Part shown: positions 1 to 25,604 of the stretch, piece by piece
Numbering within the stretch: the stretch's first letter is position 1
How the letters are laid out: each line of letters starts with the position of its first letter
IMG/VR virus record: IMGVR_UViG_3300035703_000006
Location: 1-64,000 of that record
DNA: 64,000 nt
Direction: 5' to 3' (one strand)
Position numbers and translations under genes: made by a program
Notes under the pieces: generated by a model
The model's input: only the letters and a program-made list of their open reading frames with translations
Told to the model about the DNA's origin: nothing
The model's database searches: none

Positions 1-118
1 GATTTATATTACCCAGAATGGCATTACTCTTATGCTTTGGGTGAAACGAGAATAGGTAAAAACAAATCAGAAGTTGGAAACAAACCAAAAGAGTCTCACG
101 AGATTCTAGTGGTAAAAG

Positions 119-2395: not shown

Positions 2396-2422
2396 ATTAT
2401 ATTATGTGTGACAAATAGAATT

Positions 2423-2587
2423 ATGCCTTTTACAAAGAAGTTTCCACAATCAGGAGAAACAATTCACATTCGAGTTCCAAAGTGTTATGCTGAACTAATT
2501 GAGGAATTGATGGTAACTTTAGATGCACGATTTGATGTAGAAAAAGGAAAACATCTTCTTCATAAGTTCATACACAATCTCACCTGA
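2423..2587 (+). CDS. Small ribbon-helix-helix-like DNA-binding protein, paralog A (54 aa)
   Basis: Hand-translated MPFTKKFPQSGETIHIRVPKCYAELIEELMVTLDARFDVEKGKHLLHKFIHNLT; strand-helix-helix pattern; similar to 10936..11100. Confidence 0.6.
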   Translation: MPFTKKFPQSGETIHIRVPKCYAELIEELMVTLDARFDVEKGKHLLHKFIHNLT

Positions 2588-8017: not shown

Positions 8018-8089
8018 GTCCAATGATACCCTGTGCCACTTGTACTGGTGGCACACTAAATGAGCACGGGGTTAAAAATGTGGTATTAT
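8015..8089 (+). promoter_or_regulatory. Early promoter cassette 8
   Basis: TGAGTC 8015-8020; TGTGCCA 8032-8038; TGGCACA 8049-8055; TGGTATTAT 8081-8089. Confidence 0.8.
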
Positions 8090-8148
8090 TAAAGGGTGGA
8101 GGGAGCAGGGGTGCCTGTCCCACCCACGAGACCCATTGTTTATTCTTT

Positions 8149-8727
8149 ATGACTTCTTTCACGATTGTTAAAAAAGGTGAAGAAATCAAGTTTGATTCTC
8201 AATTCACTGATGTGAATGAAGTGCGTAACTATCTGCGTGAGCAGATGTCTTACAACAACTTCGCAATGGATCTTGTTGAGAAGAAGAAAGTGTCTGCAAC
8301 TCAAATTGCTTGGATGCATTATCTTGCAACTCAAAGTGTAATTGATTCTCAAACTCCTGTTGAGTTTGGTCCTTACAAGCAACTTGTCAACAAGATGTAT
8401 GATGCAGGTGCATATCGAGCAACTAAGTTTCAAGTGCGACTGCCTGGAATTACTCTGAGCACTGTAACTAAAGGTGTCAATGTTGGTTGTGTTTATGTTT
8501 ATGAAAACAACCAATATGTTGGTAAAATTACTGCTACTGGTGATCTGATTGGTAACGTGAGTGAGGATGTTATCAATCTTCTGGAAGATGCCAATGATAA
8601 TCTCCTGCAACTGGCAAAGATTTATGGTCACGAGACTGGTACTTGTTCAATCTGTGCTCGCACACTGAATGATCCTCTCTCTGTTCAGATGGGAATTGGT
8701 CCTGTTTGTGCCAAACGACTCGGTTGA
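8149..8727 (+). CDS. DUF6011-like Cys/Zn-motif protein
   Basis: C-terminal GTCSICARTLNDPLSVQMGIGPVCAKRL; ATG 8149 lies downstream of cassette 8 (the track start at 8023 lies inside the promoter). Confidence 0.7.
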   Translation: MTSFTIVKKGEEIKFDSQFTDVNEVRNYLREQMSYNNFAMDLVEKKKVSATQIAWMHYLATQSVIDSQTPVEFGPYKQLVNKMYDAGAYRATKFQVRLPGITLSTVTKGVNVGCVYVYENNQYVGKITATGDLIGNVSEDVINLLEDANDNLLQLAKIYGHETGTCSICARTLNDPLSVQMGIGPVCAKRLG

Positions 8728-9005: not shown

Positions 9006-9054
9006 ACTCGCATACCCATCAGGGATGCTGATAGGTAGAACAATCGTAGACCCC

Positions 9055-9083
9055 TTGACAAACCCCCCGATCCGTGCTATGAT
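9055..9083 (+). promoter_or_regulatory. Canonical sigma70-type promoter
   Basis: TTGACA 9055-9060, 17-nt spacer, TG-C-TATGAT 9075-9083. Confidence 0.8.
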
Positions 9084-9105
9084 GAACGAAGTTCAGAGTC
9101 AAGAG

Positions 9106-9279
9106 ATGACCACTGCTCAACGGATGGAAAAGCAATTCTTTATTTCTTTCATCCGACTTGTTGATGAGGTTCAAGGTAAGCAAAAACTTCCTTCACAGAT
9201 TCAATCGAATCGTAAGTCTGTTTGGGTGAAGCAAACACAAAATCCTAAGCAAAAGAAAGATGCTCTTGCCCGAATCTAA
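9106..9279 (+). CDS. Hypothetical basic protein (57 aa)
   Basis: ATG 9106 after the promoter. Confidence 0.7.
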   Translation: MTTAQRMEKQFFISFIRLVDEVQGKQKLPSQIQSNRKSVWVKQTQNPKQKKDALARI

Positions 9280-9632: not shown

Positions 9633-9737
9633 ATGAAACGCAAAGAAAAGATTCAACTACTCTCCAAAGCACAAATCGGCAATGATCTTCTACTCATTGC
9701 TCAAGCAATTCTCAATTCTCAAAAGGACAAGAAATGA
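9633..9737 (+). CDS. Small hypothetical protein (34 aa)
   Basis: Hand-translated; fills the gap exactly, with an ATGA overlap to the next ORF. Confidence 0.5.
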   Translation: MKRKEKIQLLSKAQIGNDLLLIAQAILNSQKDKK

Positions 9738-9928
9738 TTCTCATTCGCAAAGAAAATCACGGGTGCATTTATACGATTGATCCAGAATCCAATGAACTTT
9801 ATTATGCTCCTGTCTATCAAGATAACACTGTAAATCTTTCTGAGTTTGCACCAGTTGATCTTGATGATTATGATGATGTAAGTGAAATTGAATCTATTCA
9901 ACAACAACTTATTCAAGCAATCAAATGA
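9734..9928 (+). CDS. Hypothetical protein
   Basis: Coupled ORF. Confidence 0.7.
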   Translation: MILIRKENHGCIYTIDPESNELYYAPVYQDNTVNLSEFAPVDLDDYDDVSEIESIQQQLIQAIK

Positions 9929-10221
9929 AACAATCAGTTAAAGATGTTATTAATCAACTTGAAAAACTGAATCCAAACGAAACAATTTTTTCACTCATTT
10001 ATACAAAGAATGATGTGAAAGAACTAGAGCATTATGATCCAATTACAGGACAAATTGTTTATCCTTATAATGATGAACTCGCAGAACAGGTTTTGTCTAA
10101 TCTAGATTGTTATGATGTAATCTATGAAACGATTTACAAGTGTATGAATGATGAAGTTTCTTATCAAGTCGATCAATTAGCAAAGAAAGAAAACATTACT
10201 ATTGAACCTGCTTCTTACTAA
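9925..10221 (+). CDS. Hypothetical protein
   Basis: ATGA overlap. Confidence 0.7.
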   Translation: MKQSVKDVINQLEKLNPNETIFSLIYTKNDVKELEHYDPITGQIVYPYNDELAEQVLSNLDCYDVIYETIYKCMNDEVSYQVDQLAKKENITIEPASY

Positions 10222-10387: not shown

Positions 10388-10390
10388 GAG

Positions 10391-10500
10391 ATTATTATCA
10401 TTTATAACAAAATAACGTTATAATTGATAATTCAATTAAATGTATTAAAAAACATAGTTTAGTGAATTGTGTTGATATGATGATAGTGTTATAAAACCTT
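10391..10500. other. Very AT-rich non-coding tract (candidate DNA-unwinding element)
   Basis: Counted 20 G/C in 110 nt, and 7 in the first 60 nt; contains TTATAAC-N8-GTTATAA. Confidence 0.5.
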
Positions 10501-10557
10501 CTTTTTATTGTCTTATATTCTCTCTAAACCCCTCTGGTTCTTGTTGTCTTGGCCTGC

Positions 10558-10617
10558 ATTATACCATAAGACCTAAAAAAAGTCAAGCACCTTACAGACT
10601 CTTCTAGGGGTGGCACA
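10558..10617 (-). promoter_or_regulatory. Leftward sigma70-type promoter carrying a TGTGCCA half-site
   Basis: Minus strand: TGTGCCA (10617-10611) ... TTGACT (10586-10581), 17 nt, TG-G-TATAAT (10563-10558); half-site 54 nt upstream of the -10, as in the cassettes. Confidence 0.75.
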
Positions 10618-10624
10618 AGGAGTT

Positions 10625-10654
10625 ATTGACAAAAACCTGTCAATACTTTATAAG
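10625..10654 (+). promoter_or_regulatory. Putative rightward sigma70-type promoter inside a palindrome
   Basis: ATTGACA-N6-TGTCAAT 10625-10644; TATAAG at 10649-10654, 17 nt after TTGACA. Confidence 0.5.
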
Positions 10655-10660
10655 AATGAA

Positions 10661-10697
10661 ACTCCTAAGACTCACACATCTTATGAGTCTTAGGAGT
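10661..10697. repeat. Perfect 14-bp inverted repeat
   Basis: ACTCCTAAGACTCA-N9-TGAGTCTTAGGAGT. Confidence 0.85.
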
Positions 10698-10884
10698 ATT
10701 TTGCTAGTTATTCCTGAGACTCACGATACTCAAACCACTTCAAAAACTGGCACATCGTATCATGAGTCTCACAGATTCGGGTGTAGACTTATAGGGTGGG
10801 TGGCAGAGGGAAGATCATCAAATACTGATAACTGATAAGAATTACCCAGAATCCAGTGATTGCAATACTTTTTCGGGGCATTAT

Positions 10885-10934
10885 AGTTTTGTCCCAAAAC
10901 CCCCTATAAATAACCCTAGTTTTGGGACAAAACT
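10885..10934 (+). promoter_or_regulatory. T4-type late promoter flanked by a 16-bp inverted repeat of self-palindromic arms
   Basis: AGTTTTGTCCCAAAAC (10885-10900) ... TATAAATA (10905-10912) ... GTTTTGGGACAAAACT (10919-10934); ATG at 10936. Confidence 0.75.
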
Positions 10935-10935
10935 T

Positions 10936-11100
10936 ATGAGACCTCAAAAGTATAAGAATTTAGGTGAAACTGAAAGAATGCGTGTACCCTTATGCAAGCA
11001 AATTACAAGTTTGTGTGATGCATTAGATAAAAAAGCAGAAGATGGTTATGATGTCGTTGCTTTATTAGATTCGTTCATTGAGAGCATACACAATATGTGA
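10936..11100 (+). CDS. Small ribbon-helix-helix-like DNA-binding protein, paralog B (54 aa)
   Basis: Hand-translated MRPQKYKNLGETERMRVPLCKQITSLCDALDKKAEDGYDVVAYLDSFIESIHNM; shares K[FY]xxxGETxxxRVPxC..LD with 2423..2587. Confidence 0.6.
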   Translation: MRPQKYKNLGETERMRVPLCKQITSLCDALDKKAEDGYDVVALLDSFIESIHNM

Positions 11101-11505
11101 ATCATTCGTTATTACTTATCAGTTCGTCTTATCATTCGTTATATCCTCGCAGTTCGTGCATACTTATCTCTTCGTCTTATGATTCGTTGTCTATACTTAA
11201 CATCATTATGAGTTCATTACACAACCCCCCATAATGTTTGCTATTTGAATCAACCAGTGCTATACTATTCATGATACTCAGTTTCTGACATAAACTGGTG
11301 TCGTCCTCTGAGTATCATTAATACCCTATGAGTTCGTTACACGACCCCCCATAAGGTTTGTTATTCTTATTGACCAGAACTATATTATTCGTGTCTCTCA
11401 GTTCGTGTTATAAACTGATGCCCTCCCTTCGTTATATCTAACCCCCCATATGGTTTCGTATTAGAATAAGGCAGTAATGAATATAAACTATTCGTGATTG
11501 TTCGT
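11070..11505 (+). repeat. Strand-biased TTCGT short-repeat (iteron-like) array
   Basis: 14 TTCGT copies counted on the + strand; the six at 11105-11187 are spaced 18,12,18,18,12 nt; no ACGAA seen in the interval. Confidence 0.75.
11207..11460 (+). repeat. Degenerate 120-bp tandem repeat (2 copies plus a partial third)
   Basis: TATGAGTTC.TTACAC.ACCCCCCATAA.GTTTG at 11207 and 11327; third ACCCCCCATA at 11441. Confidence 0.75.
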
Positions 11506-11736
11506 TTATTATAATTAAACAGCACTGTTTGACACTTATATTTTGTGTTGTTGTATTCTTATATCTAACCGATGCCCCCTATATAAAAACGCATCACTAC
11601 CCTAACCTACAACGGACCGAAAACGACCTTCAAATTGTCTTTCAAATAAAAAAATTTTACCCAATTTTTTTTTTCTTCCAAGGTTCACGCACAAAAAATA
11701 AAAAATGATATATAAGTTTAGAATTCAATAAAAAAG

Positions 11737-11895
11737 ATGACAATAAGATTAGAAATTGATGATTATGAAAAGGATCTTTTAATTGATACGATTCAACATA
11801 GATTGGATACGGACAAAATCCTAGTAATCAATAATAGTTTAAAAGAAGAACTCGAAGATCTTTTAAGGAAAGTGGAAGAAGATGAATACGTATAA
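11737..11895 (+). CDS. Hypothetical protein (52 aa)
   Basis: Hand-translated MTIRLEIDDYEKDLLIDTIQHRLD... Confidence 0.6.
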   Translation: MTIRLEIDDYEKDLLIDTIQHRLDTDKILVINNSLKEELEDLLRKVEEDEYV

Positions 11896-12052
11896 TATTT
11901 CAGTCAATGGAAATGAAATATTGAGTCAAGTGCCGCAGAATGATTTACAGGAAAATCTGAAAGTTATCAGAGGACTTGTATGGACATCTGGGGGAAATGA
12001 TGAGGACATTATAGTGTCTCTAAATAAAAACGAAGGCCATTGCAATGAATGA
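11882..12052 (+). CDS. Hypothetical protein (56 aa)
   Basis: Hand-translated MNTYNISVNGNEILSQVP...GLVWTSGG. Confidence 0.55.
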   Translation: MNTYNISVNGNEILSQVPQNDLQENLKVIRGLVWTSGGNDEDIIVSLNKNEGHCNE

Positions 12053-12101: not shown

Positions 12102-12851
12102 ATGGCTAAAGGATTTACGGTAAAAGCAAAACTTCCTACAGGTCCTGTGGAAGGAGAATTTAATTTAGAAGCAGCAAAAGAAATGATGAGAGGCAAGTCA
12201 GTTGTCTTTTGTCTACCTGGAAGAGGAGTTTCGTATCTTTATTTGAAGAATTTTGTTCAATTGTGTTTTGATCTTGTTCAAAATGGAGCAAGTATCCAGA
12301 TTTCACAAGATTATAGTTCAATGGTGAACTTTGCCCGATGTAAGTGTCTTGGGGCAAATGTTCTCAGAGGACCTAAGCAAATTCCTTGGGATGGAAAACT
12401 ACAATATGATTATCAACTTTGGATTGATAGTGATATTGTTTTTGACACTGAGAAGTTCTATCGTCTTGTAGCAATGGATAAAGATATTGCTGCTGGTTGG
12501 TATTGTACTGAAGATGGACACACAACATCTGTTGCACATTGGTTGCAGGAAGATGATTTCCGTAATAATGGTGGAGTAATGAATCACGAAACCTTAGAGA
12601 CGATGAGCAAGCGTCGCAAACCATTCACAGTTGATTACACAGGTTTCGGATGGGTTCTGATTAAGAAAGGAGTCTTTGAAAATCTTGAATATCCTTGGTT
12701 TGCTCCGAAGATGCAGGTGTTTGAATCTGGTGAGGTTCAAGATATGTGTGGCGAAGATGTCTCATTCTGTCTAGATGCAAAAGAAGCAGGATTTGAAATC
12801 TGGTGTGATCCTCAGATTCGTGTGGGTCATGAGAAAACAAGAATTATTTGA
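12102..12851 (+). CDS. Glycosyltransferase-like (GT-A fold) conserved cyanomyovirus protein
   Basis: LWIDSDIVF (DxD), GFGWVLIKKGVFE, GEDVSFC, VRVGHEK pattern. Confidence 0.75.
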   Translation: MAKGFTVKAKLPTGPVEGEFNLEAAKEMMRGKSVVFCLPGRGVSYLYLKNFVQLCFDLVQNGASIQISQDYSSMVNFARCKCLGANVLRGPKQIPWDGKLQYDYQLWIDSDIVFDTEKFYRLVAMDKDIAAGWYCTEDGHTTSVAHWLQEDDFRNNGGVMNHETLETMSKRRKPFTVDYTGFGWVLIKKGVFENLEYPWFAPKMQVFESGEVQDMCGEDVSFCLDAKEAGFEIWCDPQIRVGHEKTRII

Positions 12852-14930: not shown

Positions 14931-15332
14931 ATGCCAATTAGCATTTCAAGATCTTTTAAAGACATTAGTTTGTCTTTTTCACGTCATCCAGTTACGAATG
15001 ATATTTTAATTTTAAACAATGAGGATGCAATCAAAAGATCTGTTCTTAATTTAGTTCAAACTCAACTTGGTGAGAGGTTCTTCAATGATTTATTGGGAAC
15101 CTCTGTGAATTCTTCTTTATTTGAGCTTGCTACAGAGGAGATAGAAATTATTTTAAACAGAGAAATTGAAACAGTTTTAAGTAATTTTGAACCAAGAATT
15201 AGATTAAATAATATTGAGGTAGAATTGGTTGATGATTATAATGAACTCAATGTAAAAATTGTATATGATATTGTTGGACTACCACTTCCCACACAAAATA
15301 TAGAGTTTATTCTACAAGGAACTAGAGTATAA
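14931..15332 (+). CDS. gp25: Baseplate wedge subunit gp25
   Basis: FKDISLSF, AIKRSVLNL, GERFF, NFEPR; upstream of gp6. Confidence 0.9.
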   Translation: MPISISRSFKDISLSFSRHPVTNDILILNNEDAIKRSVLNLVQTQLGERFFNDLLGTSVNSSLFELATEEIEIILNREIETVLSNFEPRIRLNNIEVELVDDYNELNVKIVYDIVGLPLPTQNIEFILQGTRV

Positions 15333-17224
15333 TGTCCTTCAATAATTTTACAAATTTAGATTTCAATGATTTAAGAACTCAAATTAAAAATTATTTGAGA
15401 GCAAATGCAAAATTTACGGATTTTGATTTTGAAGGATCAAATTTTTCTGTACTTATTGATCTTTTAGCATATAATTCTTACATAACAGCATTTAACACCA
15501 ATATGGTGGTAAATGAGTCCTTTATTGATAGTGCAACTCTTCGTGAGAATGTTGTTTCTCTTGCACGTAATATTGGTTATGTACCAAGATCAAAAAGAGC
15601 ATCAAGAGCAAAAGTAAGTTTCAGTGTAAGTACACCTAGAGATGCTAATGGGAATTTAATTTCAAAAACAGTAACACTTAAAGCAGGTGTGGTTGCTTTA
15701 GGTGCTGTAGAAAATGGAAATTATATTTTTTCAATCCCAGAAGATAAGACAGTTGTTATTGATAATGATGGATTTGCAAACTTTACAGATATTGACATAT
15801 TTGAAGGTACATTTTTAACAAAATCATTTACAATAAATGATTCACAATTGAATCAAAAATTTTTAATTCCAAATGCAAGTGTAGATACTTCAACAATTCG
15901 TGTTAAAGTCACAAATGTTGTGAATGAAAAATATGAATTATATAATAATATATTCAAAGTAGATAAAAACTCAAAATTATTTTTAGTTCAAGAAGTTAGT
16001 GATGAAAAATATGAAATTTTATTTGGTGATAATATATTAGGAAAAAGACCACCAAGTGGAAGTACAATTTTAGTTTCTTATATTGTAACAAATGGCAGAG
16101 AAGGTGATGGATGTACTAATTTTACTTTTTCTGGCATTTTAATTGATAATAATCAAACAGAAATCACCAATAATATTTCCCTAATTACCACAACTCAAGT
16201 ATCAGAAAATGGAGATGATATAGAATCAATTGATTCTATTAAATATCTTGGACCAAGAGTGTATGCTTCTCAATATCGTGCAGTAACTGCAAATGACTAT
16301 AGAGCAATTATTCCGATGGTCTTTCCCAATGTAGATACAGTTTCTGCTTATGGTGGTGAAGAGTTAGACCCTCCACAATATGGAAAAGTTTTTATTTCTA
16401 TAAAACCAAGAAATGGTAAGTTTTTATCTCAAATTTCTAAAAATGAAATTAAAAGAGAATTGAAACAATATTCTATTGCAGGAATACAACCAGAAATTAT
16501 TGATTTGAAGTATTTGTATGTTGAAGTAGAAACTTCAGTTTATTATGATAAAAGTTCAACAACAAGTGTTGTTAATTTGCAATCTAGAGTTTTAAATACA
16601 TTAAAAAACTATGCAAAATCATCAGAATTAAATAGTTTTGGTGGAAGATTTAAATTTAGTAAAGTTTCTACATTAATTGACAATACAAGTACTTCCATCA
16701 CATCAAACATCACTAAAATAAAAATAAGAAGAGATTTGCAACCAGAATTGAATAAACTTGCAAATTATGAAATATGTTTTGGAAATCAATTTCACGTACA
16801 AAAATTGATAGATGGAAAAGGATATAATATAAAATCCACAGGATTTACAATTAAAGATATATCAGATACATTATATCTTAGTGATATTCCAAAAACAGAT
16901 GATGCAGGAAATATATTCTTTTTTAAGATAGTTGATAATTCTCCAATTGTAGTTTTAAATAATGCCGGAGTTGTTGATTATAAAAAAGGAGAAATAAAGT
17001 TAAATCCTGTGATCATCACCTCTTCAACTAATACTAATGGAATTGAAATTCAAGCAATTCCAGAATCAAATGATGTCATATCTTTGAAAGATATATACTT
17101 AGAGTTGGATACAACTACACTTAAAGTTAATATGCTAGAGGATGTAATTACTTCCGGAGAAAATACATCTGCAACAGAGTATCCAGTAACATCTAGTTAT
17201 AATAACGGGAATTATATAAGATAA
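15332..17224 (+). CDS. gp6: Baseplate wedge subunit gp6
   Basis: FTDFDFEGSNFSVLIDLLAYN, ESFIDSATLRENVVSLARNIGY, RAVTANDY. Confidence 0.92.
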   Translation: MSFNNFTNLDFNDLRTQIKNYLRANAKFTDFDFEGSNFSVLIDLLAYNSYITAFNTNMVVNESFIDSATLRENVVSLARNIGYVPRSKRASRAKVSFSVSTPRDANGNLISKTVTLKAGVVALGAVENGNYIFSIPEDKTVVIDNDGFANFTDIDIFEGTFLTKSFTINDSQLNQKFLIPNASVDTSTIRVKVTNVVNEKYELYNNIFKVDKNSKLFLVQEVSDEKYEILFGDNILGKRPPSGSTILVSYIVTNGREGDGCTNFTFSGILIDNNQTEITNNISLITTTQVSENGDDIESIDSIKYLGPRVYASQYRAVTANDYRAIIPMVFPNVDTVSAYGGEELDPPQYGKVFISIKPRNGKFLSQISKNEIKRELKQYSIAGIQPEIIDLKYLYVEVETSVYYDKSSTTSVVNLQSRVLNTLKNYAKSSELNSFGGRFKFSKVSTLIDNTSTSITSNITKIKIRRDLQPELNKLANYEICFGNQFHVQKLIDGKGYNIKSTGFTIKDISDTLYLSDIPKTDDAGNIFFFKIVDNSPIVVLNNAGVVDYKKGEIKLNPVIITSSTNTNGIEIQAIPESNDVISLKDIYLELDTTTLKVNMLEDVITSGENTSATEYPVTSSYNNGNYIR

Positions 17225-17225
17225 A

Positions 17226-20200
17226 ATGTCAGAAATTAAAAGAGTAAAAATACAATCTTTCATTGAATCTCAGATTCCAGAGTTTCTAAATTCTGAATCT
17301 CCGTTATTTAAAGAATTTTTAGAGCAATATTATATTTCTCAAGAACATCAAACAGGTGTTGTTGACTTATCAGCAAATTTACAAAAATATAAAAGTATTG
17401 ACAATTTCAATACTGAAACTTTTTATAGTTTAGTTGGAATTTGTACTTTGACTTCTGACTTGGCATCTTTTGAAGATACTTTATATGTCAATCATACAAT
17501 AGGATTTCCTCAACAATATGGTCTTTTGAAAATTGATGATGAAATAATTACTTACACGGGAATTACAACTAACTCTTTTACTGGATGCATTCGTGGTTTT
17601 TGTGGATTAGAAAAAAATGAAGTAAATGATTCATTCAAATTTTCATCGACAGATTCCTCAGATCATATTAAAGGTTCTCAAGTAACTAATTTAAATATTT
17701 TATTTTTCCAAGAATTATTTAAAAAATTTAAAACCCAATTTTTGCCTGGGTTTGAAGATAGAGAATTTACTAGTGGTGTAAATTTACAAACTATTTTATC
17801 AAGAGCAAAGGATTTTTATATCACTAAAGGAACTGACACTTCATTTAAGATACTTTTTAGTATTTTATTTAATGAATCTATATCTGTCATTAAACCTCAA
17901 GATTATGTAATCTCATCGTCATCTAATGAATATTTGATAACAAAAAATATCTTAGTTGAGCAAATTGCTAGAGATGCAAATCTTAAAGTTTCAGATTCTG
18001 TTTTAAGAAAAGAATTAAAAGGAAAAACAATATTCCAAACTACTTCAGACAATAAAACTGCAAGTGCTTCAATTTACAATGTTGAATATAGACCTGTAAA
18101 TACTGGTGACTTTATATACAATTCGATTGGTGCTGGACAAACAACACAAAAGAATTATACAATAAAAGATTTTTATGAAATCTCATTAGATAGTACATCT
18201 TTGATATTAGATTTTAAATCTACTAAGAAAACAAAGGTTTTAGAATATACACTTAAAAATTCAAAATCAATTTTAGTTGATTCTACAATTGGATTTAAGC
18301 AGTCTGGAACTTTACTGATTAAACCGAAAAATCTTTCAAATCCGATTGTTCTATCCTATACTGATAAAACAATCAATGAATTTTTAAATGTAACAGGATT
18401 GACAATAGATTTAGATTATGGGGCAGAAATAATTGAAGAAGAATTTTTATACTCATATTTGAATGATGGGACAAAAGTTGAATTTAGACTAATAAACATT
18501 ATTGATAGTATTGATTATGGAAAAACATCAAATTTAAGAGTCGATGACAAAATAAACCTATCTTCATTTGGAATTGATTTAAATGATAGACTTGAATTTA
18601 ATCAATGGATTTATAATATCCCAACTACACATAACATAAAATCAGTCGAAGACAATACAATATATTTGTACGAAAACATTAATTTGTCAATTGGAGATAA
18701 AGTAATATTATCCAATCCAAATTTAATTGATGTAGAAAGTGTTGAAGTAGAAGTTGAAAATTTTGGATTTAATAATTATGGATATTTTGTTAACGTAAAG
18801 AGTTTTGGTCAAATCTTGAATGACAAGACTCAGTTAAAGAAAACAATCAATAAAGCATTTAGCAATCAAAATTATTTTCCAAATATTTCTGTTTTTTCTA
18901 CTGGAATTCAAAATAGCTATATTGATTATAATAATGAAAATTTTTATGTAGCATCTTCAGGATTGCCAAATTATGATATTTACGCAACAGATAGAAAAGT
19001 TTTCCCCTCTGCTGGAGTTGGAGTTTCTATATTAAATTGCCAAGATCATAATTTTTTTACAGGTGAAAAAATATACTATATTCCAAAGTCTGGTAATGTT
19101 GGTATAAAAACTTCTGCATATTTTGTAACAAAATTAAATAAAGACCAAATTAAACTTTCGTATAGTAATTCTGATGTATTTTCTAAAAATTATGTTTTTA
19201 CCAATGCTAACATCAATGGCGATTGCATTGTAAAATTTGATTTTCAAAATAAAACATTAGAAGACCAAAAACTTTTTAAAAAATTTAATTTAACAAAAAA
19301 ATTAAATAAATTTTTTACTAAAGACGACAGGAGTACAATTGATAGAGCAACAGGAATTTTAATTAATGGGGTTGAAGTGTTTTCCCCAACTCTTTATGAT
19401 GAAAACATTTATTATGGGAAATTGGATTCAGTAAAAATTGAATCTGAAGGAAAGGGATATGATGTTATTAATTTCTCTGGGTTGGAAGTCACTGATATTA
19501 ATGGTTCTAATGCAGATTTAAAAGCACATTTGATTGGTAGTTTAAGTGAAGTAAAAATATTAAGACCAGGAATTGGATATTCAAGAAAACCAAAAATTAC
19601 TTTATCTGGGGGAAATGGTTCTGGTGCAGTTTTAGAGTCAAATCTAGTAAAAACTAACATTATATCAAATTTTAAGGGAAGCACTGCTGTCAGCATTGGT
19701 TTTACTACAATTGATTTCCTAAATGGACACAATTTTGATGACGGTGAAGAAGTCTCATACATTAATAATTCAAATGGAAGTGTAAATCCACTTGTAAATA
19801 ATTCAAATTATTTTGTTGGAATAGTAAGTTCAACTCAATTAAAATTATATAAAACAAAAGAAAAAGCATTAGGAAAAACTGATCCAATTGTTTTTACTGG
19901 AATTGGATCAGGAACTCATTCTTTAAAAACATTAAATTCAAAAAATACAATTACAAAAATTTATGTAAAAAATCGTGGAGAAGGATATTCAAATAGAAAT
20001 ATTAGTGTTTTAAGTCAAATTTCGGTAAACAATCAAGAAAATGGCATAAACACTTTTGATCATTACATTTTTGCGAAAAATCATAATTTTAAAGATGAGG
20101 ATATTGTTCAGTATCAAAACAATAATACACCAATATCTGGTCTATCAACTCAGACAAATTATTATGTTAAAGTTGTAGATGAAAATAAATTTAAATTGTC

Positions 20201-23200
20201 AGTTCAAGGTCCTTCTGGAAGTGAGAAGGATAATTATAATAATAAAAAATATGTTAAATTTAATTCAATAGGTTCAGGGATTCATACATTTTCTTACCCA
20301 CCAATTCAAATAAATGTTGAATATGTTTCTGGAATTTCAACTACTCCATCACTGGAACCAATAGTTCTTGGTTCAGTTGAAAATGTATTTATAAGTAATG
20401 AAGGAAGAAATTATGGTTCTTCTAATATTTTGAATTATCATAGAAGACCATACGTTGGACTTTCTTCAATTTCAGAGTGCGTATTAAAACCAGTAATATT
20501 AAATGGTTCTATTATTGATGTTCAAGTATTAAATTTTGGTAAAGGATATAAAAAAGACATTGATATAAAGATATTCGGTAAAGGAAAATACGCAGAAGTT
20601 TACCCAATTGTTGAAGATGGAAAAATAAAAAGCATAAATGTTTTAAATCCCGGAATAGGGTATGATGAAAAAACCACTTTATTTGTACAAAGAAGAGGAA
20701 GTGGTGCAAAATTTACAGCAAATGTTTTTGAATGGAAAATTAATCAGGTTGAAAAAAATAAAAATATAATTTCATCAGATGATGAAGGATTGATTGCTCC
20801 AAGTAAAAATAATAATTTAACATTAGAATTTATACATTTTTATCCTACAAAAAAATTAAGATATAAAGTAAATAACTTTATAGACAAAGATGGAAATGAA
20901 GTTGTTCCCGACAATAATCAAAACCCATATAAAATTTTAGGTTGGGCATATGATGGAAATCCAATCTTTGGTCCTTACGGAAAAATTAATGGTGAATCTA
21001 AACTATTAAAATCTAGTTATGAATTAAAGAATTTCGGAGAAATTGAAGTTTCAATTGCCAATCAATTGAGACCGGATTTTCCTTCTGGATTTTTTGTTCA
21101 AGATTATTCTTACACTGAAGGTAATGGTGATTTGGATGAATATAATGGAATGTTTATTGATGACAAGAACTTACCAAACATAAACTATGGTTACTTCGCA
21201 ACATTGTCTGAGGACGTAAAAGAACCACAATACCCTTACATATTGCCATTATTATTTAAAGATTCCCCAATAAAAGAAAATTTTAATCCACAATTTAATC
21301 AAAAGATTGATTTTGAAGAACTTAATATTGTTAGGAATGTTGGTCCATACTATCTAAATTCAGATAATTCTACATATGAATTAATTGATAAAGTTGACCA
21401 GAAATACAAGCAAGAATTTATAGTTAATGACATAAAATTATCTGGTATTGATTCAGTTTCTATTTTTAATTCTGGTGATGGATATAAAGTTGGAGATTTA
21501 CTAAAATTTGATAGCCAATCTTCTAGTGGCAATTCAGTTTCTGCTTCAATTTCACGAATAGAAGGAAAATCAGTATCAAATGTTCAGGTTGGTATTTCAA
21601 CTTTTACTGATGTCAATTTTATAACTAAAGGAATTTCAGTTAAGGGGATCACATCTCAACCTCATAATTTGGTAAGTGATGATGAAATTATTATCTCAAA
21701 TATATCATCTAGTGATTTTGATTATCTGAAAGGAACTAAGAAAATTTATGTTTTCCAAAAAACTACTGGTTTAGTTGAAGATCTGCAAAACCAATCAGCA
21801 ACTGGAGTTACAACATATATTAAAGTAAATGATGTAACAGGATTCGAAGTTGACAACTTTATAGGAATAGGAACGGAAACTTTAAAGGTAATTGATGTTT
21901 CTTCATCAGAATCAAAATTATATGTTAATAGATTTGATAATTATTCTGGAATACATAGTGTCGGATTGGTAAGTGTATCTTTACTGCCAAATTCATTCAC
22001 ATTTTCTTCCGATTTTTATGACGACTCAATATTAGAAAATAAAACTACTTATTTTAATCCAACCAATACCATTGGAATTGGAACTACTGGTTCAGTTTAT
22101 TATAATTTAGTTGGATTCTTAACTTCTTTAATTGGTACACTAGATGCTTCTAGTCCAAATGTAGTTGGATTAAATACAGCAATTCTGAAAATTGGTGATT
22201 ATTTAGAAGGAAGTAATAATATTCAAAATAACACTATCATAACATCAATAGGAATTGGTACAATTGGAATATCCCAAAATCACACTCTTGGTGGTGGCAT
22301 ATCTACAAGTTTATTGAGATTTTCAAGAAATGTATATGATAAAACAATACCAAGTCGTTCAATTTATATACCAAGTCACAAATATTATACAGGACAACCA
22401 ATTACGTATAATGTCGGATTGGGTGGAAATGGTATCATTGTATCTGAAACTGGAGCAGGAACAACATTTAGATTAACAAATAATCAAACAATATATGCAG
22501 TCAATTTAGGTAAAGATTATGTTGGTTTATCGACTTTAGGATTTACAACCAATACTGGAATTGGAACTACTCAAAATTCATTATATTTCTTTAACCCTGT
22601 CAGTAATGTTGGACTATCACATTCACTAACAACTCAATTTGAAAAAATTAAAGGAGTAGTTAACAATTATTCTGTAGTCGTATCAACATCTCAAACACAC
22701 GGATTGCAAACTGGTGATAACATTAATTTTAATTTTTATCAAAGTAACACAAAAACGATAAAAATTAGATACGATAGTGCAATTAGAAAAATAACCACTG
22801 AACTTATTGATTTTAATCCAATTTCCGGAATAAACACATTAACAAATGAAATTGAAATACCTGGAAATAATTTAAAAACAGGAGATAAAGTTGTATATTA
22901 TACTGAAGGACAAACTTCCGTTGGTGGATTGTCCACAAATTCTGTATATTATGTACTAAAACAAGATTTGAATAAAATTAAATTGTGCAATTATCAGTAT
23001 GATACTAATGTTGGTGTTGCAATCACTTTAACTTCTGTTGGGGCAGGTTCTTCTCATAGTTTTGCACTAATTAATCCACCAATTAATATTTTGAAAGGAA
23101 ATATATTATCTTTCGATTTAAGTGATAGTAGCCTTTTAAATATGGACTTGAAATTATATAAAGATTCTAATTTCACTCAAGAACTTGAGACATTTAAGTA

Positions 23201-25604
23201 TTCCAATTATAATGAAAGGAAATTAGATACAAATTTGACATCAATTCCAACTGAAATTTATTACAATTTAGTTTCATTATCTAATCAGGAAATAGAAAAA
23301 AATCAACTATCTTCTGACAATGAAGTTGTTGGATTTAATAAAATTAAAATAATTCCAAATAACATCAATACTTACCATCCTATAATAAAAACAGGAAATT
23401 CACAATTTAAATTCAATTTAAATACTATTCCAGAACCCCTTACATTCATTTCTGGTTTATCAACTTCTAACTACGATACAGATTCAAAAAATGCTATTGG
23501 GCCTATATCAAATATTAGAGTTAATTTTGGAGGAAGAGGATATAAAAAAGTTCCAAAAATTTCAACAATCCAAACATCTTTAGGCAAAGGGGCATCATTA
23601 GAAGCAAAATCATCATCTATTGGAAAAATAGAAAATTTAGAAAGAGTTAAAGATGGATTTGATTATCCAAGTGATATTACATTAAAACCATATTTGAGTG
23701 TTCCTGCTGTTGCTCAAGTTGGAGATATATCAAGAATAGAATATATTGGAATCATTACTGGTGGAAAAAATTATAATACTGCACCCACATTAAAGGTTTT
23801 AGGAAATGATAAGATTAAATTATCTGCAAATTTACAAAGTGGTAGTGTAGTTAGTGTTAATATTATTCAAAATACAAATGATTTAATAAATCCTTTAAGA
23901 ATTGTACCTATAAGAAATTCTAATGGTTATGAAATTGATTCTGTTGTTTCTGCCAATAATGGTTCTAGTGTAACTTTAGAACTTCTTAATAACTCTGAAT
24001 TGTATCCACTAATTACAACTGGTTATGGTAATACTGATGTTGTATTTCCATTTTCTCAAGGTGATGAAATTTTTATAGAAAATTGCAGACAAGTTGATAA
24101 AACTAAAGACAATATAAATTCAAAAGATTATGGATATAGATTTTTCACCATAACTTCAGTAAGTCCCGAAAATTATACTATTACTTTTAGTATGACTGGA
24201 GTTAAAGATTCTTTGAATTTAAATCAGAATAATGGAGAATCAAATTATGAAAATGGATTTGGATATGGATATGTGGTGAATAAAAAAGATATGGCAGAAT
24301 TTGAAATGAACTTAGTTGATGACTTAAGTTATATTTCTGGTGAATCTGTCGTTGGATTTGATCGACAAGGAAATGCTGTTTTCTCTGCAAAAGTTGCAGA
24401 AGATGGTTGGGATAATGATATTAATCAATTAAGAATGATTGATGTGAAAGGTGAGCTTGAAATTGGCAATAAACTAAAAGGGGAAAAATCATTATTAAAT
24501 GGAACAATTAAAAACATAAACATATTTAATTTAAAAGCAAATCTCGGAGTATCAAGAAATAAAGTCAATGATAGTAAGAAACAAAATGGATATTTGAATG
24601 ATTACTTACAAAGAATTTCTGATAATTTTTACTATCAAAAATTCTCATATGCAATAAAAAGTCAACTTTCTTATGACAAATGGAAAGAACCCATTCGTTC
24701 AATTATTCACCCATCTGGATTTAAAGAATTTTCTGATTTAGATATTATAAGCATTCCATCTTCTTCTATGAAAGTTGGAATAAGCAGTAATAATTTAAGC
24801 TTAAATGTCTTGATGGATAATGTACAATCACTTTATTCCAAAAATAACTTTATTCTTGTTTCTGAAGATGAAGATAATTTATTTGAAGATGGTTCAATTG
24901 AGAGAGTTAACATTGGAGCAGAAGAAGGAATAGTTGCTGGAATTGGAACATTTGGGCCAATTTTTGGAATTCCATTAAAACAATACATTTTAAATAAAAC
25001 TAATAAAGTTTTATTGATGAATGACATTAGTGAAGAGTTTGATGGCTCTAATGATTATATTTCACTAGGAACAACTTCAATCACATTCAATTCATTAACT
25101 CAATATTACGTTGGAATTGCTACTAATAATTTAAATGTAGGAGATTATCTTGCAAATTCTGAATTTTTAATTCCAGAAGCAACCAGAATTGAATCTATAG
25201 GAATTAATAGTGTTAGAATAAATCTTTCACATCGTCTTACGAGTGGAATTAGCACAACTAATGTGGAAATTAGAAGAAAACTTCCAGGAAATAAGATTGT
25301 TGGTAAAAAATCTTTTGAATTAACTTCTGGTATTGGTTCAGATAAAGTTCCATTATATTACAGAGAATTTGATTCAAATTCAACTGAAGTTTTGAAATTG
25401 GACAATAATATTATTGAACTTAAAAATCATAATTTTCAATCTGGTCAAAAAATATTTTATAACCAAGATATTATTGATATTAGTCCAGTTGGTTCAGCAA
25501 CAACTGAAGTTGATAATGGATTTTCTTACACCATTTCCAACAGATTTGATTCAAATACAATTATGAGATTTGATATGACTATATTTAATTTTGATTCAAA
25601 TTAA
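17226..25604 (+). CDS. gp7: Baseplate wedge initiator gp7-like protein (2792 aa)
   Basis: Follows gp6; ESQIPEF N-terminus, KDFYITKGTDTSFKILF, IIHPSGFKEF; internal GxGY repeats and a YHYH-like segment. Confidence 0.8.
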   Translation: MSEIKRVKIQSFIESQIPEFLNSESPLFKEFLEQYYISQEHQTGVVDLSANLQKYKSIDNFNTETFYSLVGICTLTSDLASFEDTLYVNHTIGFPQQYGLLKIDDEIITYTGITTNSFTGCIRGFCGLEKNEVNDSFKFSSTDSSDHIKGSQVTNLNILFFQELFKKFKTQFLPGFEDREFTSGVNLQTILSRAKDFYITKGTDTSFKILFSILFNESISVIKPQDYVISSSSNEYLITKNILVEQIARDANLKVSDSVLRKELKGKTIFQTTSDNKTASASIYNVEYRPVNTGDFIYNSIGAGQTTQKNYTIKDFYEISLDSTSLILDFKSTKKTKVLEYTLKNSKSILVDSTIGFKQSGTLLIKPKNLSNPIVLSYTDKTINEFLNVTGLTIDLDYGAEIIEEEFLYSYLNDGTKVEFRLINIIDSIDYGKTSNLRVDDKINLSSFGIDLNDRLEFNQWIYNIPTTHNIKSVEDNTIYLYENINLSIGDKVILSNPNLIDVESVEVEVENFGFNNYGYFVNVKSFGQILNDKTQLKKTINKAFSNQNYFPNISVFSTGIQNSYIDYNNENFYVASSGLPNYDIYATDRKVFPSAGVGVSILNCQDHNFFTGEKIYYIPKSGNVGIKTSAYFVTKLNKDQIKLSYSNSDVFSKNYVFTNANINGDCIVKFDFQNKTLEDQKLFKKFNLTKKLNKFFTKDDRSTIDRATGILINGVEVFSPTLYDENIYYGKLDSVKIESEGKGYDVINFSGLEVTDINGSNADLKAHLIGSLSEVKILRPGIGYSRKPKITLSGGNGSGAVLESNLVKTNIISNFKGSTAVSIGFTTIDFLNGHNFDDGEEVSYINNSNGSVNPLVNNSNYFVGIVSSTQLKLYKTKEKALGKTDPIVFTGIGSGTHSLKTLNSKNTITKIYVKNRGEGYSNRNISVLSQISVNNQENGINTFDHYIFAKNHNFKDEDIVQYQNNNTPISGLSTQTNYYVKVVDENKFKLSVQGPSGSEKDNYNNKKYVKFNSIGSGIHTFSYPPIQINVEYVSGISTTPSLEPIVLGSVENVFISNEGRNYGSSNILNYHRRPYVGLSSISECVLKPVILNGSIIDVQVLNFGKGYKKDIDIKIFGKGKYAEVYPIVEDGKIKSINVLNPGIGYDEKTTLFVQRRGSGAKFTANVFEWKINQVEKNKNIISSDDEGLIAPSKNNNLTLEFIHFYPTKKLRYKVNNFIDKDGNEVVPDNNQNPYKILGWAYDGNPIFGPYGKINGESKLLKSSYELKNFGEIEVSIANQLRPDFPSGFFVQDYSYTEGNGDLDEYNGMFIDDKNLPNINYGYFATLSEDVKEPQYPYILPLLFKDSPIKENFNPQFNQKIDFEELNIVRNVGPYYLNSDNSTYELIDKVDQKYKQEFIVNDIKLSGIDSVSIFNSGDGYKVGDLLKFDSQSSSGNSVSASISRIEGKSVSNVQVGISTFTDVNFITKGISVKGITSQPHNLVSDDEIIISNISSSDFDYLKGTKKIYVFQKTTGLVEDLQNQSATGVTTYIKVNDVTGFEVDNFIGIGTETLKVIDVSSSESKLYVNRFDNYSGIHSVGLVSVSLLPNSFTFSSDFYDDSILENKTTYFNPTNTIGIGTTGSVYYNLVGFLTSLIGTLDASSPNVVGLNTAILKIGDYLEGSNNIQNNTIITSIGIGTIGISQNHTLGGGISTSLLRFSRNVYDKTIPSRSIYIPSHKYYTGQPITYNVGLGGNGIIVSETGAGTTFRLTNNQTIYAVNLGKDYVGLSTLGFTTNTGIGTTQNSLYFFNPVSNVGLSHSLTTQFEKIKGVVNNYSVVVSTSQTHGLQTGDNINFNFYQSNTKTIKIRYDSAIRKITTELIDFNPISGINTLTNEIEIPGNNLKTGDKVVYYTEGQTSVGGLSTNSVYYVLKQDLNKIKLCNYQYDTNVGVAITLTSVGAGSSHSFALINPPINILKGNILSFDLSDSSLLNMDLKLYKDSNFTQELETFKYSNYNERKLDTNLTSIPTEIYYNLVSLSNQEIEKNQLSSDNEVVGFNKIKIIPNNINTYHPIIKTGNSQFKFNLNTIPEPLTFISGLSTSNYDTDSKNAIGPISNIRVNFGGRGYKKVPKISTIQTSLGKGASLEAKSSSIGKIENLERVKDGFDYPSDITLKPYLSVPAVAQVGDISRIEYIGIITGGKNYNTAPTLKVLGNDKIKLSANLQSGSVVSVNIIQNTNDLINPLRIVPIRNSNGYEIDSVVSANNGSSVTLELLNNSELYPLITTGYGNTDVVFPFSQGDEIFIENCRQVDKTKDNINSKDYGYRFFTITSVSPENYTITFSMTGVKDSLNLNQNNGESNYENGFGYGYVVNKKDMAEFEMNLVDDLSYISGESVVGFDRQGNAVFSAKVAEDGWDNDINQLRMIDVKGELEIGNKLKGEKSLLNGTIKNINIFNLKANLGVSRNKVNDSKKQNGYLNDYLQRISDNFYYQKFSYAIKSQLSYDKWKEPIRSIIHPSGFKEFSDLDIISIPSSSMKVGISSNNLSLNVLMDNVQSLYSKNNFILVSEDEDNLFEDGSIERVNIGAEEGIVAGIGTFGPIFGIPLKQYILNKTNKVLLMNDISEEFDGSNDYISLGTTSITFNSLTQYYVGIATNNLNVGDYLANSEFLIPEATRIESIGINSVRINLSHRLTSGISTTNVEIRRKLPGNKIVGKKSFELTSGIGSDKVPLYYREFDSNSTEVLKLDNNIIELKNHNFQSGQKIFYNQDIIDISPVGSATTEVDNGFSYTISNRFDSNTIMRFDMTIFNFDSN

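What the first reader, a model, noticed from the sequence alone, without database searches (positions are those of the whole stretch)
11070..11505. One-strand TTCGT iteron-like array with 12/18-nt periodicity
Seen: 14 TTCGT copies on the + strand (11070, 11105, 11123, 11135, 11153, 11171, 11183, 11333, 11388, 11402, 11428, 11455, 11491, 11501), many as CTTAT[C/G]A(G)TTCGT, and none seen on the - strand. A rough expectation at this composition is under one per 400 bp. The array starts at the end of RHH paralog B. Established: iterons load initiators or helicases, and T4-type primase recognises short GTT/GCT template triplets. Inference: directional protein-loading or priming sites; repeated single-stranded RNA-binding motifs in a 3' extension of the late transcript are an alternative.
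Basis: partly seen in the sequence, partly recalled or inferred. Interest (0 to 1): 0.6.

Follow-up and report, generated by a model that had tools for sequence, protein, structure and literature searches.

The report
Conserved one-strand TTCGT site array in cyanophage
A non-coding stretch of an uncultured freshwater T4-like cyanophage carries 14 same-strand copies of the word TTCGT; the array is kept in at least 40 related phage contigs, where it usually sits among host-type DnaA boxes, so it is a real functional element (most likely part of a replication-origin or control region) whose binding partner is still unknown.

Summary
There are 14 TTCGT on the + strand in 11070-11505 and none on the - strand. 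The genome-wide rate predicts 0.37 copies; the region's own dinucleotide make-up predicts 1.2. No other place in the 247-kb genome has more than 5.

The window is the start of a freshwater T4-like cyanomyovirus (Kyanoviridae-like). The array lies in a 1.35-kb non-coding region between small early-type genes and the baseplate module.

The same oriented array (8-16 copies; extended motif V-TTCGT-B-A-T-W) is present at the syntenic place in 40 related IMG/VR loci (38 distinct contigs). In 33 of them the tally is 399 + versus 15 -. The word is kept about twice as well as neighbouring non-coding 5-mers, and new copies always arise in the + orientation.

In sister phages the array is interleaved with perfect cyanobacterial DnaA boxes (TTTTCCACA). 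This window has none. The array is not coding, not shown in hairpin loops, not tied to the adjacent RHH-like ORF, and not found as arrays in 201 sampled host-family genomes.

Best reading (about 0.4): oriented iteron-like or priming sites of a replication-origin/control region. Main rivals: a repeated UUCGU motif in an early non-coding RNA, or an operator cluster for the early promoters in the repeats.

The parts
10626..10654 (+). sigma70-like promoter (TTGACA, 17 nt, TATAAG) at the start of the conserved non-coding region
   Evidence: Read from the sequence. The equivalent in L006 is TTGACA-N17-TATAAT. Not listed by the scan because its last base is G.
10661..10771 (+). Conserved 5' hairpin domain. 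Four arms (GAGACTCA / TGAGTCT) can pair in alternative ways; the first hairpin is followed by a T-run.
   Evidence: Inverted repeats I7, I8, I11. Terminator-like hit. Alignment of 11 relatives with many G-U pairs on the + strand but almost no covariation.
10885..10934 (.). Perfect 16-nt inverted repeat enclosing TATAAATA (10905-10912; T4-late-promoter-like), just upstream of ORF 10936
   Evidence: I1. The same arrangement is in L006 and L304.
10936..11100 (+). It contains the first TTCGT (11070) by its codons.
   Evidence: ORF. No Pfam or PHROG family. AF2 model: extended N-terminus plus two helices, pLDDT 81, no RHH fold match. Homologues in 11 of 40 array-bearing loci.
11101..11190 (+). Short-unit array: six TTCGT (11105, 11123, 11135, 11153, 11171, 11183) spaced 18/12 nt, with a 30-nt super-period
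   Evidence: (D5, D7). The same super-period appears as 13+17 in L002, L004 and L304, which rules out a conserved reading frame.
11207..11446 (+). Two copies of a 120-nt repeat (73% alike). Each has a C-run + ATA word, a sigma70-like promoter (11238-11266, 11358-11386) and TTCGT sites. Copy 1 has TTCAT where relatives have TTCGT.
   Evidence: D1-D4. Promoter-like hits. Alignment of 14 arrays. A>G at 11271 in RNA-library contigs restores TTCGT.
11447..11530 (+). Partial third unit with TTCGT at 11455, 11491 and 11501, ending in the palindrome AAACAGCACTGTTT (11517-11530). The pair 11491/11501 is the most conserved.
   Evidence: TTCGT (often TTCGTTCGTG) is kept at this place even in marine and cultured Kyanoviridae that lack the array.
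11571..11612 (+). Deeply conserved block: small hairpin (GATGC/GCATC) around a C-run + TATATAAAA, then CTACCCTAACCTACAA
   Evidence: The stem changes to GTTGC/GCAAC in L002 and others.
11690..11760 (.). A/T-tract stretch, among the ~1% least stable 60-mers of the genome (a second one lies at 10400-10460)
   Evidence: Nearest-neighbour stability profile.
11737..12052 (+). Two small acidic conserved ORFs (52 and 56 aa) directly downstream of the non-coding region
   Evidence: The 56-aa family folds as beta-beta-alpha-beta (pLDDT 88) with no structural match.

Best explanation
The TTCGT copies are functional, orientation-constrained recognition sites (about 10 nt: V-TTCGT-B-A-T-W). They sit in the main non-coding control region of a T4-like cyanophage. 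That region most likely acts as a replication origin of the T4 type, in which early promoters open the DNA.

Proposed mechanism (inferred):
- Rightward early transcription from the sigma70-like promoters in and upstream of the repeats opens the region.
- The + strand is the non-template strand. It then exposes many copies of the site to a phage replication factor: an initiator or helicase-loader, or the gp61-type primase.
- In most sister phages host DnaA, bound at adjacent TTTTCCACA boxes, assists. In this phage the boxes have been replaced by a small ORF cassette.

Shown: the array is real, unique in the genome, conserved, oriented, non-coding and linked to DnaA boxes in relatives.
For: - Enrichment and uniqueness of the array.
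- Syntenic conservation in 10 relatives found through a flanking gene and in 30 of 33 further contigs found through the box-site composite.
- TTCGT words are kept at aligned places in 53-74% of other arrays, against 25-41% for other 5-mers.
- Independent gains are always on the + strand, and there are 0 ACGAA in 14 aligned arrays.
- 3-8 perfect cyanobacterial DnaA boxes abut or interleave with the sites in 6 of 11 array loci found through the flanking gene and in none of the array-less loci. The recurring composite is TGTGGAAAA-CTA-TTCGT. The box consensus is from PMC4674748.
- Promoter-like sites are enriched in the region: 17 against 8.7 +/- 2.9.
- T4 origins are a promoter plus a downstream unwinding region. 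T4 oriE depends on an early promoter, has 12-nt direct repeats, and lies next to the baseplate genes as this region does (PMC3016281).
- A gp61-type primase is encoded.
Against: - No DnaA box exists in this window.
- The array itself is not unusually easy to melt; only its flanks are.
- No initiator gene was identified. The adjacent small ORFs are acidic or lack any DNA-binding signature.
- The core is far shorter than classical 17-22-bp iterons, and spacing is irregular outside 11101-11190.
- GC skew gives no origin signal, because all genes lie on one strand.
- Only 57% of sites have the T needed for a T4-type GTT primase site.
- Strict orientation plus irregular spacing fits an RNA motif just as well.
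- The T4 oriE repeats are themselves the coding repeat of the gp5 beta-helix and have no proven role.
Confidence: 0.4

Rival explanations
1. RNA-level motif. The region is transcribed rightward by the host polymerase early in infection. The 9-16 UUCGU(U)AU copies act in the RNA, as a decoy or sponge for an RNA-binding protein or ribonuclease, or as processing sites in a roughly 1-kb non-coding transcript or long leader.
For: - All copies are on the sense strand of a genome transcribed entirely in the + direction.
- Spacing is irregular and sites turn over while orientation is kept.
- Sigma70-like promoters point rightward and no terminator lies inside the array.
- The conserved 5' hairpin domain has G-U pairs that work only on the + strand.
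- Contigs from two metatranscriptome libraries of different studies cover 11104-11539 and 11218-11627.
Against: - The RNA-library contigs show no strand, and DNA carry-over is not excluded.
- The motif is not presented in hairpin loops: flank complementarity is at chance, and unpaired probability is 0.53 against 0.48.
- The overall fold is not better than shuffles on the + strand (z = -1.7).
- There is no Rfam match.
- A few full-length inverted copies and palindromic pairs exist in relatives.
- The tight interleaving with DnaA boxes, a DNA-level element, is not explained.
Confidence: 0.25
2. Operator cluster. The sites bind a phage-encoded duplex-DNA regulator that shuts off or tunes the early promoters inside the repeats and the strong conserved promoter block downstream.
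For: - The best-conserved sites sit right after a -10 box (TATACT-A-TTCGT; 13 of 14 arrays), inside the promoter spacer in some relatives, and next to the conserved block.
- 1-2 copies are kept at the core in array-less Kyanoviridae.
- 4 of 9 reverse-strand copies carry the extended flank.
Against: - Duplex-binding regulators usually tolerate both orientations, as the DnaA boxes in the same region do. Here the ratio is 399:15.
- No regulator was identified.
- Six closely spaced sites at 11101-11190 lie away from any promoter-like element.
Confidence: 0.2
3. Operator or centromere-like array of the adjacent RHH-like protein, as with ParR-parC, the omega heptads or the ParG boxes.
For: The array starts 5 nt after the ORF's stop codon. 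The AF2 model (extended N-terminus plus two helices) is compatible with an RHH monomer. RHH proteins are known to read short repeated words (own knowledge).
Against: The ORF is absent from 29 of 40 array-bearing loci, whereas the array is present without it (L002, L004, L306). There is no Pfam, PHROG or fold support for RHH. The ORF has its own perfect palindrome at 10885-10934, which is a more likely operator.
Confidence: 0.05
4. No function: left-overs of tandem duplication of a promoter-bearing cassette.
For: The region is built of 30-nt and 120-nt repeats.
Against: The spacers diverge while the word is kept. There are lineage-specific gains by point mutation. The array is conserved across arrays that are only 62-81% identical overall.
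Confidence: 0.05

Closest known systems
T4 oriE with its 12-nt 'iterons' (PMC3016281)
   Same: Both are in T4-type phages. Both have direct repeats with a 12-nt step, depend on or are associated with an early (host-type) promoter, and lie just upstream of the baseplate wedge genes. In both the role is undefined.
   Different: In T4 the repeats lie inside gene 5 and coincide with the 24-nt coding repeat of the gp5 beta-helix. Here the DNA is non-coding, the conserved core is 5-10 nt, and about half of the copies are irregularly spaced. There is no sequence similarity.
Iteron-type theta origins with DnaA boxes (P1 oriR, pSC101, R6K gamma; own knowledge and PMC3016281)
   Same: Same-orientation repeated sites stand next to DnaA boxes (in sister phages), with A/T-rich flanks.
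   Different: Classical iterons are 17-22 bp with regular spacing and sit beside the gene of their Rep protein. Here the core is short, no Rep was found, and this window has no DnaA box.
Phage primase recognition sites (T7 5-nt sites; T4 GTT/GCT with pentamer primers; own knowledge)
   Same: Both are short, strand-specific words read on single-stranded template. TTCGT+T would template exactly a 5-nt pppACGAA primer. A gp61-type primase is encoded.
   Different: No clustered primase-site array of this kind is known. 43% of sites lack the following T. The conserved A-T-W beyond it is unexplained.
Protein-sponge RNAs such as CsrB/RsmZ (own knowledge)
   Same: Both carry many copies of a short word on one strand, with irregular spacing and copy-number turnover.
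   Different: Sponge motifs sit in hairpin loops; these do not. No UUCGU-binding protein is known.
PeSL promoter/stem-loop cassettes of T4-type hyperplastic regions (Arbiol et al. 2010; from memory, not re-read)
   Same: The 120-nt units combine a small stem-loop and an early-type promoter, and are repeated between small early genes.
   Different: PeSLs flank genes. Here the units are tandem and empty, and the TTCGT word is an added feature.

Membership tests
Iteron-containing replication origin | Three or more same-orientation repeated binding sites | tested here: met
   14 + strand copies and 0 - strand copies. Relatives have 8-16.
Iteron-containing replication origin | Repeat units of about 17-22 bp at a regular, helically phased spacing | tested here: not met
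   The conserved part is 5 nt (about 10 with weak flanks). Regular spacing holds only for six copies, and there is no 10-11-nt phase.
Iteron-containing replication origin | Adjacent gene for the initiator that binds the repeats | tested here: inconclusive
   Neighbouring small ORFs have no DNA-binding signature. Clade-specific ORFs 9025 and 9734 co-occur with the array but are uncharacterised.
Iteron-containing replication origin | DnaA boxes and an A/T-rich unwinding element next to the repeats | tested here: inconclusive
   There are no boxes in this window, but 3-8 perfect boxes in 6 of 11 array-bearing relatives. The flanks, not the array, are in the ~1% least stable 60-mers.
Iteron-containing replication origin | Replication starts there | not testable with these tools
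   This needs marker-frequency or nascent-strand mapping.
T4 oriE-type origin | Early-mode promoter plus direct repeats near the baseplate genes | tested here: met
   Met by consensus only. Promoter-like sites at 10626, 11238 and 11358. Repeats. The gp25/gp6 homologues lie at 14931-17224.
RHH operator / centromere array | The adjacent protein has the ribbon-helix-helix fold | tested here: inconclusive
   No family hit. The AF2 secondary structure is compatible, but no fold match was found.
RHH operator / centromere array | Array and protein gene co-occur | tested here: not met
   The ORF is present in 11 of 40 array-bearing loci.
Protein-sponge non-coding RNA | The region is transcribed on the motif strand | tested here: inconclusive
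   Contigs of two RNA libraries cover it, but their strand is unknown and DNA carry-over is possible.
Protein-sponge non-coding RNA | Motifs are exposed in loops of a structured RNA | tested here: not met
   Flank complementarity is at chance. The unpaired-probability excess is small. The fold z-score is -1.7.
DnaA-box + DnaA-trio unwinding module (PMC8287927) | A DnaA box within 0-16 bp of at least three NAN trios on one strand | tested here: inconclusive
   Not met in the window, which has no box. In relatives the box is followed at once by CTA-TTC-GTT-ATA, meaning T (A on the other strand) at every middle position. The required orientation could not be checked from the text. Distant copies cannot belong to one contiguous filament.
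Protein-coding repeat | Spacing in multiples of 3 and an open frame kept in relatives | tested here: not met
   The window spacings are multiples of 3, but relatives use 13/17. By contrast, the unrelated hits of the pattern scan in other viruses are coding repeats.

The most novel reading that the evidence does not exclude
The roughly 1-kb region is an abundant early non-coding RNA of freshwater cyanomyoviruses. Its 9-16 UUCGU(U)AU copies titrate a host or phage RNA-binding protein or ribonuclease, making it a phage-encoded protein sponge. The DnaA boxes of sister phages would then couple its synthesis to the host's replication state.
Probability: 0.2. Interest if true: 0.8.

Novelty: new variant of a known kind. 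Interest (0 to 1): 0.6.

Why it matters
- No replication origin or large regulatory non-coding element has been defined for T4-like cyanophages. Full-text searches for cyanophage origins or DnaA boxes found nothing relevant.
- This array gives a sharply defined, conserved and experimentally tractable candidate: a 10-nt oriented site, 9-16 copies, and natural variants with and without host DnaA boxes.
- If the origin reading holds, it would show T4-type phages recruiting host DnaA. It would also give a sequence-defined entry site for the phage replisome.
- If the RNA reading holds, it would be a new kind of phage decoy RNA.
- Either way it marks a lineage of abundant freshwater phages. The sequence was found in runs of 14 studies (freshwater, sediment, estuary, groundwater and subsurface metagenomes).

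Tried and rejected
- Rfam at gathering and permissive thresholds, and tRNA search: nothing.
- blastn of the region against 50,697 phage records: no match.
- Coding repeat: rejected, because relatives use 13/17 spacing.
- Hairpin-loop presentation of the motif: rejected.
- Host regulon idea: triple sites and N5-spaced double sites are not above the reversed-pattern control in 201 and 61 picocyanobacterial genomes.
- LytTR-type regulator (the AlgR site contains GTTCGTC, from memory): no LytTR domain in the genome.
- Pattern scan of IMG/VR with three TTCGT(YAT) sites: apart from two already known relatives, the hits were coding repeats of unrelated viruses with spacings in multiples of 3.
- GC-skew origin signal: none, the skew is monotonic.
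- Duplex-stability minimum at the array: none.
- 56-aa and 52-aa downstream ORFs as DNA binders: no sequence or fold support, and both are acidic.
- RHH ORF: Pfam, PHROG, protein atlas and Foldseek gave nothing.
- ORF 9025: atlas gave nothing.
- Second densest TTCGT spot (136.7 kb): coding, chance.
- Literal paper searches for the words TTTTCCACA and TTCGTTAT alone returned only primers.
- The primary T4 oriE paper (PMC94188) is not held.
- Complex prediction was not used, because no protein pair is claimed.

Full report
**What the window is.** The window is the first 64 kb of a 247,112-bp IMG/VR virus record. All large ORFs lie on the + strand. The baseplate wedge genes gp25 and gp6 are at 14931-17224. 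psbA and psbD are present, as is a gp61-type primase. The nearest cultured phages by protein are Synechococcus T4-like cyanomyoviruses (Kyanoviridae), at 82-86% identity for the 249-aa protein at 12102. Near-identical DNA occurs in freshwater, subsurface, sediment, estuary and groundwater metagenomes from 14 studies. The finding lies in a 1.35-kb stretch (about 10390-11736). Apart from one 54-aa ORF, this stretch is non-coding. It separates a block of small early-type genes from two tiny conserved ORFs and the baseplate module.

**Check of the observation.** The nearest - strand copies are at 9977 and 12030.
- The genome holds 207 + and 175 - copies, so 436 bp should hold 0.37. The next densest stretch has 5 and is coding.
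- A Markov model built from the region's own dinucleotides expects only 1.2, and never exceeded 8 in 20,000 trials.
- Fourteen of the 17 CpG of the region are inside the word.

The anatomy is more layered than 'one array'.
- One copy (11070) is inside the ORF.
- Six copies form a true short-unit array at 11101-11190, with spacings 18, 12, 18, 18, 12.
- Seven copies belong to two and a half copies of a roughly 120-nt repeat (11207-11530). Each unit carries a C-run followed by ATA and a sigma70-like promoter (TTGCTA-N17-TATACT at 11238-11266; TTGTTA-N17-TATATT at 11358-11386).

**Conservation.**
- Homologues of the flanking 249-aa protein brought in 80 IMG/VR loci. Ten of them have 8-14 + strand TTCGT about 1 kb upstream of the gene and 0-3 on the other strand. 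The rest have none.
- The exact 17-mer that joins a DnaA box to a site in those relatives (TGTGGAAAACTATTCGT) occurs in 36 IMG/VR contigs.
- Thirty of the 33 new contigs carry 9-16 TTCGT within 900 bp downstream. The total is 399 + against 15 -.
- From 272 distinct site contexts the extended motif is V-TTCGT-B-A-T-W: the base before is rarely T, the base after is T in 57% and A in 4%, then A 53%, T 76%, A/T 85%.
- In an alignment of 14 distinct arrays that are 62-81% identical to the window, spacers diverge while the word stays. A TTCGT of one array is found at the aligned place in 53-74% of the others, against 25-41% for other 5-mers. The caveats are that aligners favour shared words and the sequences are related.
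- Several copies are lineage-specific gains, some by a single point change. All are in the + orientation, and the 14 arrays hold 184 TTCGT and no ACGAA.
- Cultured and marine relatives (S-SSM7, S-SCSM2R, Sf-FS3, S-SRM01, DSL-LC02 and many IMG/VR loci) lack the array. Most of them still keep one or two copies, often as TTCGTTCGTG, directly upstream of a deeply conserved block. That block corresponds to window 11517-11612: palindrome AAACAGCACTGTTT, C-run + TATATAAAA inside a small hairpin, then CTACCCTAACCTACAA.
- The freshwater clade therefore multiplied an older element.

**What it is not.**
- It is not coding. The window's spacings are multiples of three, but relatives keep the 30-nt super-period as 13+17.
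- It is not a known RNA family or tRNA.
- It is not a loop motif. Bases flanking the word are complementary no more often than chance. Predicted unpaired probability is 0.53 against 0.48 for other positions. The whole stretch folds no better than shuffles on the + strand (z = -1.7).
- It is not a host regulon signature. In 201 genomes of the picocyanobacterial family, three sites at 11-19-nt spacing are rarer than the reversed control pattern and are coding repeats. The N5-spaced pair is likewise below control in 61 genomes.
- It is not bound to the adjacent ORF. That ORF has no Pfam or PHROG family. Its AF2 model (extended N-terminus, two helices, pLDDT 81) is compatible with an RHH monomer but finds no RHH structure. 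It is present in only 11 of 40 array-bearing loci.
- Near relatives show the ORF as a cassette. L306 has six DnaA boxes and no ORF, L304 has the ORF plus two boxes, and the window has the ORF and no box.

**The DnaA boxes.** TTTTCCACA is the species-specific DnaA box of cyanobacteria (PMC4674748).
- Six of the 11 array-bearing loci found through the flanking gene (the window counted) hold 3-8 perfect boxes, in both orientations, within about 300 bp. None of the array-less loci holds one.
- The boxes abut the sites, as TGTGGAAAA-CTA-TTCGT and TTTTCCACA-GG-TTCGT.
- An RNA-library contig of a relative shows the same boxes (loose end). The cultured freshwater phage DSL-LC02 has boxes without the array.
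- Such a density of perfect boxes is otherwise the mark of a chromosomal origin or a DnaA-titrating locus. The boxes come in both orientations whereas TTCGT comes in one. This argues that TTCGT is read in a direction-dependent way.

**How it most likely works.** Three facts constrain the mechanism:
1. Orientation is enforced copy by copy.
2. Spacing is free outside the short array.
3. The element lives among early, rightward promoters and, in sisters, among DnaA boxes.

T4 origins are a promoter plus a downstream region that stays open as an R-loop. The displaced strand then receives helicase and primase. T4 oriE uses an early promoter, has 12-nt direct repeats of unknown role, and lies next to the baseplate genes (PMC3016281).

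By analogy I propose the following. Rightward early transcription opens this region and the + strand becomes the displaced strand. Its TTCGT sites are then entry or start sites for a phage replication factor. The primase version is attractive because a template TTCGT followed by T would specify exactly a T4-style five-base primer, pppACGAA (inference from established T4 primase rules). However, only 57% of sites have that T, and the conserved A-T-W beyond it is unexplained.

All of this is inference. What is shown is the anatomy, the conservation and the DnaA-box linkage. I give this reading 0.4.

**Rivals.**
- The same orientation rule is met if the word acts in the + strand RNA. Two metatranscriptome libraries from different studies have contigs over 11104-11539 and 11218-11627. 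The upstream conserved hairpin domain uses G-U pairs that exist only on the + strand. The contigs carry no strand information, DNA carry-over is possible, and the motif is not loop-exposed. I give this 0.25.
- An operator cluster for a duplex-binding regulator fits the best-conserved copies: right after a -10 box, and in a promoter spacer in some relatives. It also fits the few inverted copies with full flanks. It explains the 399:15 orientation bias poorly. I give this 0.2.
- An RHH operator or centromere, and non-functional duplication remnants, get 0.05 each.

**Comparison with the known.** The nearest named thing is the T4 oriE repeat cluster. When I looked at T4 itself, those repeats turned out to be the 24-nt coding repeat of the gp5 beta-helix. 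The resemblance is therefore one of place and promoter type, not of sequence or repeat nature. Classical iterons differ in length, regularity and the presence of a Rep gene. No paper in the library describes an origin, DnaA boxes or such repeats in cyanophages. I rate it a new variant of a known kind (oriented repeated sites in a phage origin/control region), with real uncertainty about the kind.

**Limits.** Relatives are phylogenetically close, so counts of loci are not independent events. The 33 composite-selected loci are biased towards having DnaA boxes. The read tool gave contigs, not reads. No experiment was possible.

Noticed in passing
L002:2770-3040, L306, L319, L304 (relatives); syntenic with window 10830-11100: Sister phages carry 3-8 perfect cyanobacterial DnaA boxes (TTTTCCACA, both orientations) in this non-coding region. 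The exact composite TGTGGAAAACTATTCGT occurs in 36 IMG/VR contigs. The cultured freshwater phage DSL-LC02 also has boxes (L086:513-555). DnaA boxes have not been reported for T4-like phages in the papers searched.
   Followed up: partly
window 11517-11612: This block is conserved across Kyanoviridae, including S-SSM7, S-SCSM2R, Sf-FS3, S-SRM01 and DSL-LC02. It consists of the palindrome AAACAGCACTGTTT, a small hairpin around C-run + TATATAAAA (the stem co-varies GATGC/GCATC to GTTGC/GCAAC), then CTACCCTAACCTACAA. On the - strand it holds a perfect TATAAT (11508-11513) pointing into the array.
   Followed up: partly
window 10661-10771: Four conserved arms (GAGACTCA / TGAGTCT) can form two hairpins or an alternative middle pairing, and the first hairpin is followed by a T-run. 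This looks like an attenuator. There are many G-U pairs on the + strand but almost no covariation among 11 relatives.
   Followed up: partly
window 10885-10934: A perfect 16-nt inverted repeat encloses a T4-late-type TATAAATA directly upstream of the 54-aa ORF. It is a likely operator of that cassette, and the same arrangement is found in L006 and L304.
   Followed up: no
window 2408-2584 and 10936-11100: These two distant paralogues of a small protein family (shared K-[YF]...G-E...IRVP core) have further copies in L050. There is no family assignment.
   Followed up: partly
L009:~900-1440 and L012:~2660-2940: Relatives have free-standing homing-endonuclease-like ORFs inserted in the same non-coding region (HNH-type motif in L009, GIY-YIG-type motif in L012).
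   Followed up: no
window 11737-11895 and 11882-12052: Two tiny acidic ORFs directly downstream are conserved. The 56-aa family is found in 39 of 40 array-bearing loci but in few array-less ones at E<=1e-5. Its AF2 model (beta-beta-alpha-beta, pLDDT 88) has no structural match. The S-SRM01 homologue is annotated 'DNA-binding domain-containing protein'.
   Followed up: partly
window 9025-9279 and 9734-9928: These small ORFs are found almost only in array-bearing loci (19 vs 1 and 23 vs 1). ORF 9025 has a basic C-terminus. They are candidates for a partner of the array, but the association is confounded by relatedness.
   Followed up: partly
window 8023-8727: A 234-aa protein with a C-terminal DUF6011 domain (CxxC ... 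GIGPxC). In marine relatives this gene directly precedes the conserved block.
   Followed up: no
L088:3903-4070 (phage T4, gene 5): The repeats at T4 oriE are the 24-nt coding repeat of the gp5 beta-helix. The annotated origin point lies about 50 nt upstream of them.
   Followed up: yes
window 17226-25604, 32504-37486, 39093-46565: Three giant ORFs (2792, 1660 and 2490 aa) lie in the structural module, in a stretch of only 26-31% G+C.
   Followed up: no
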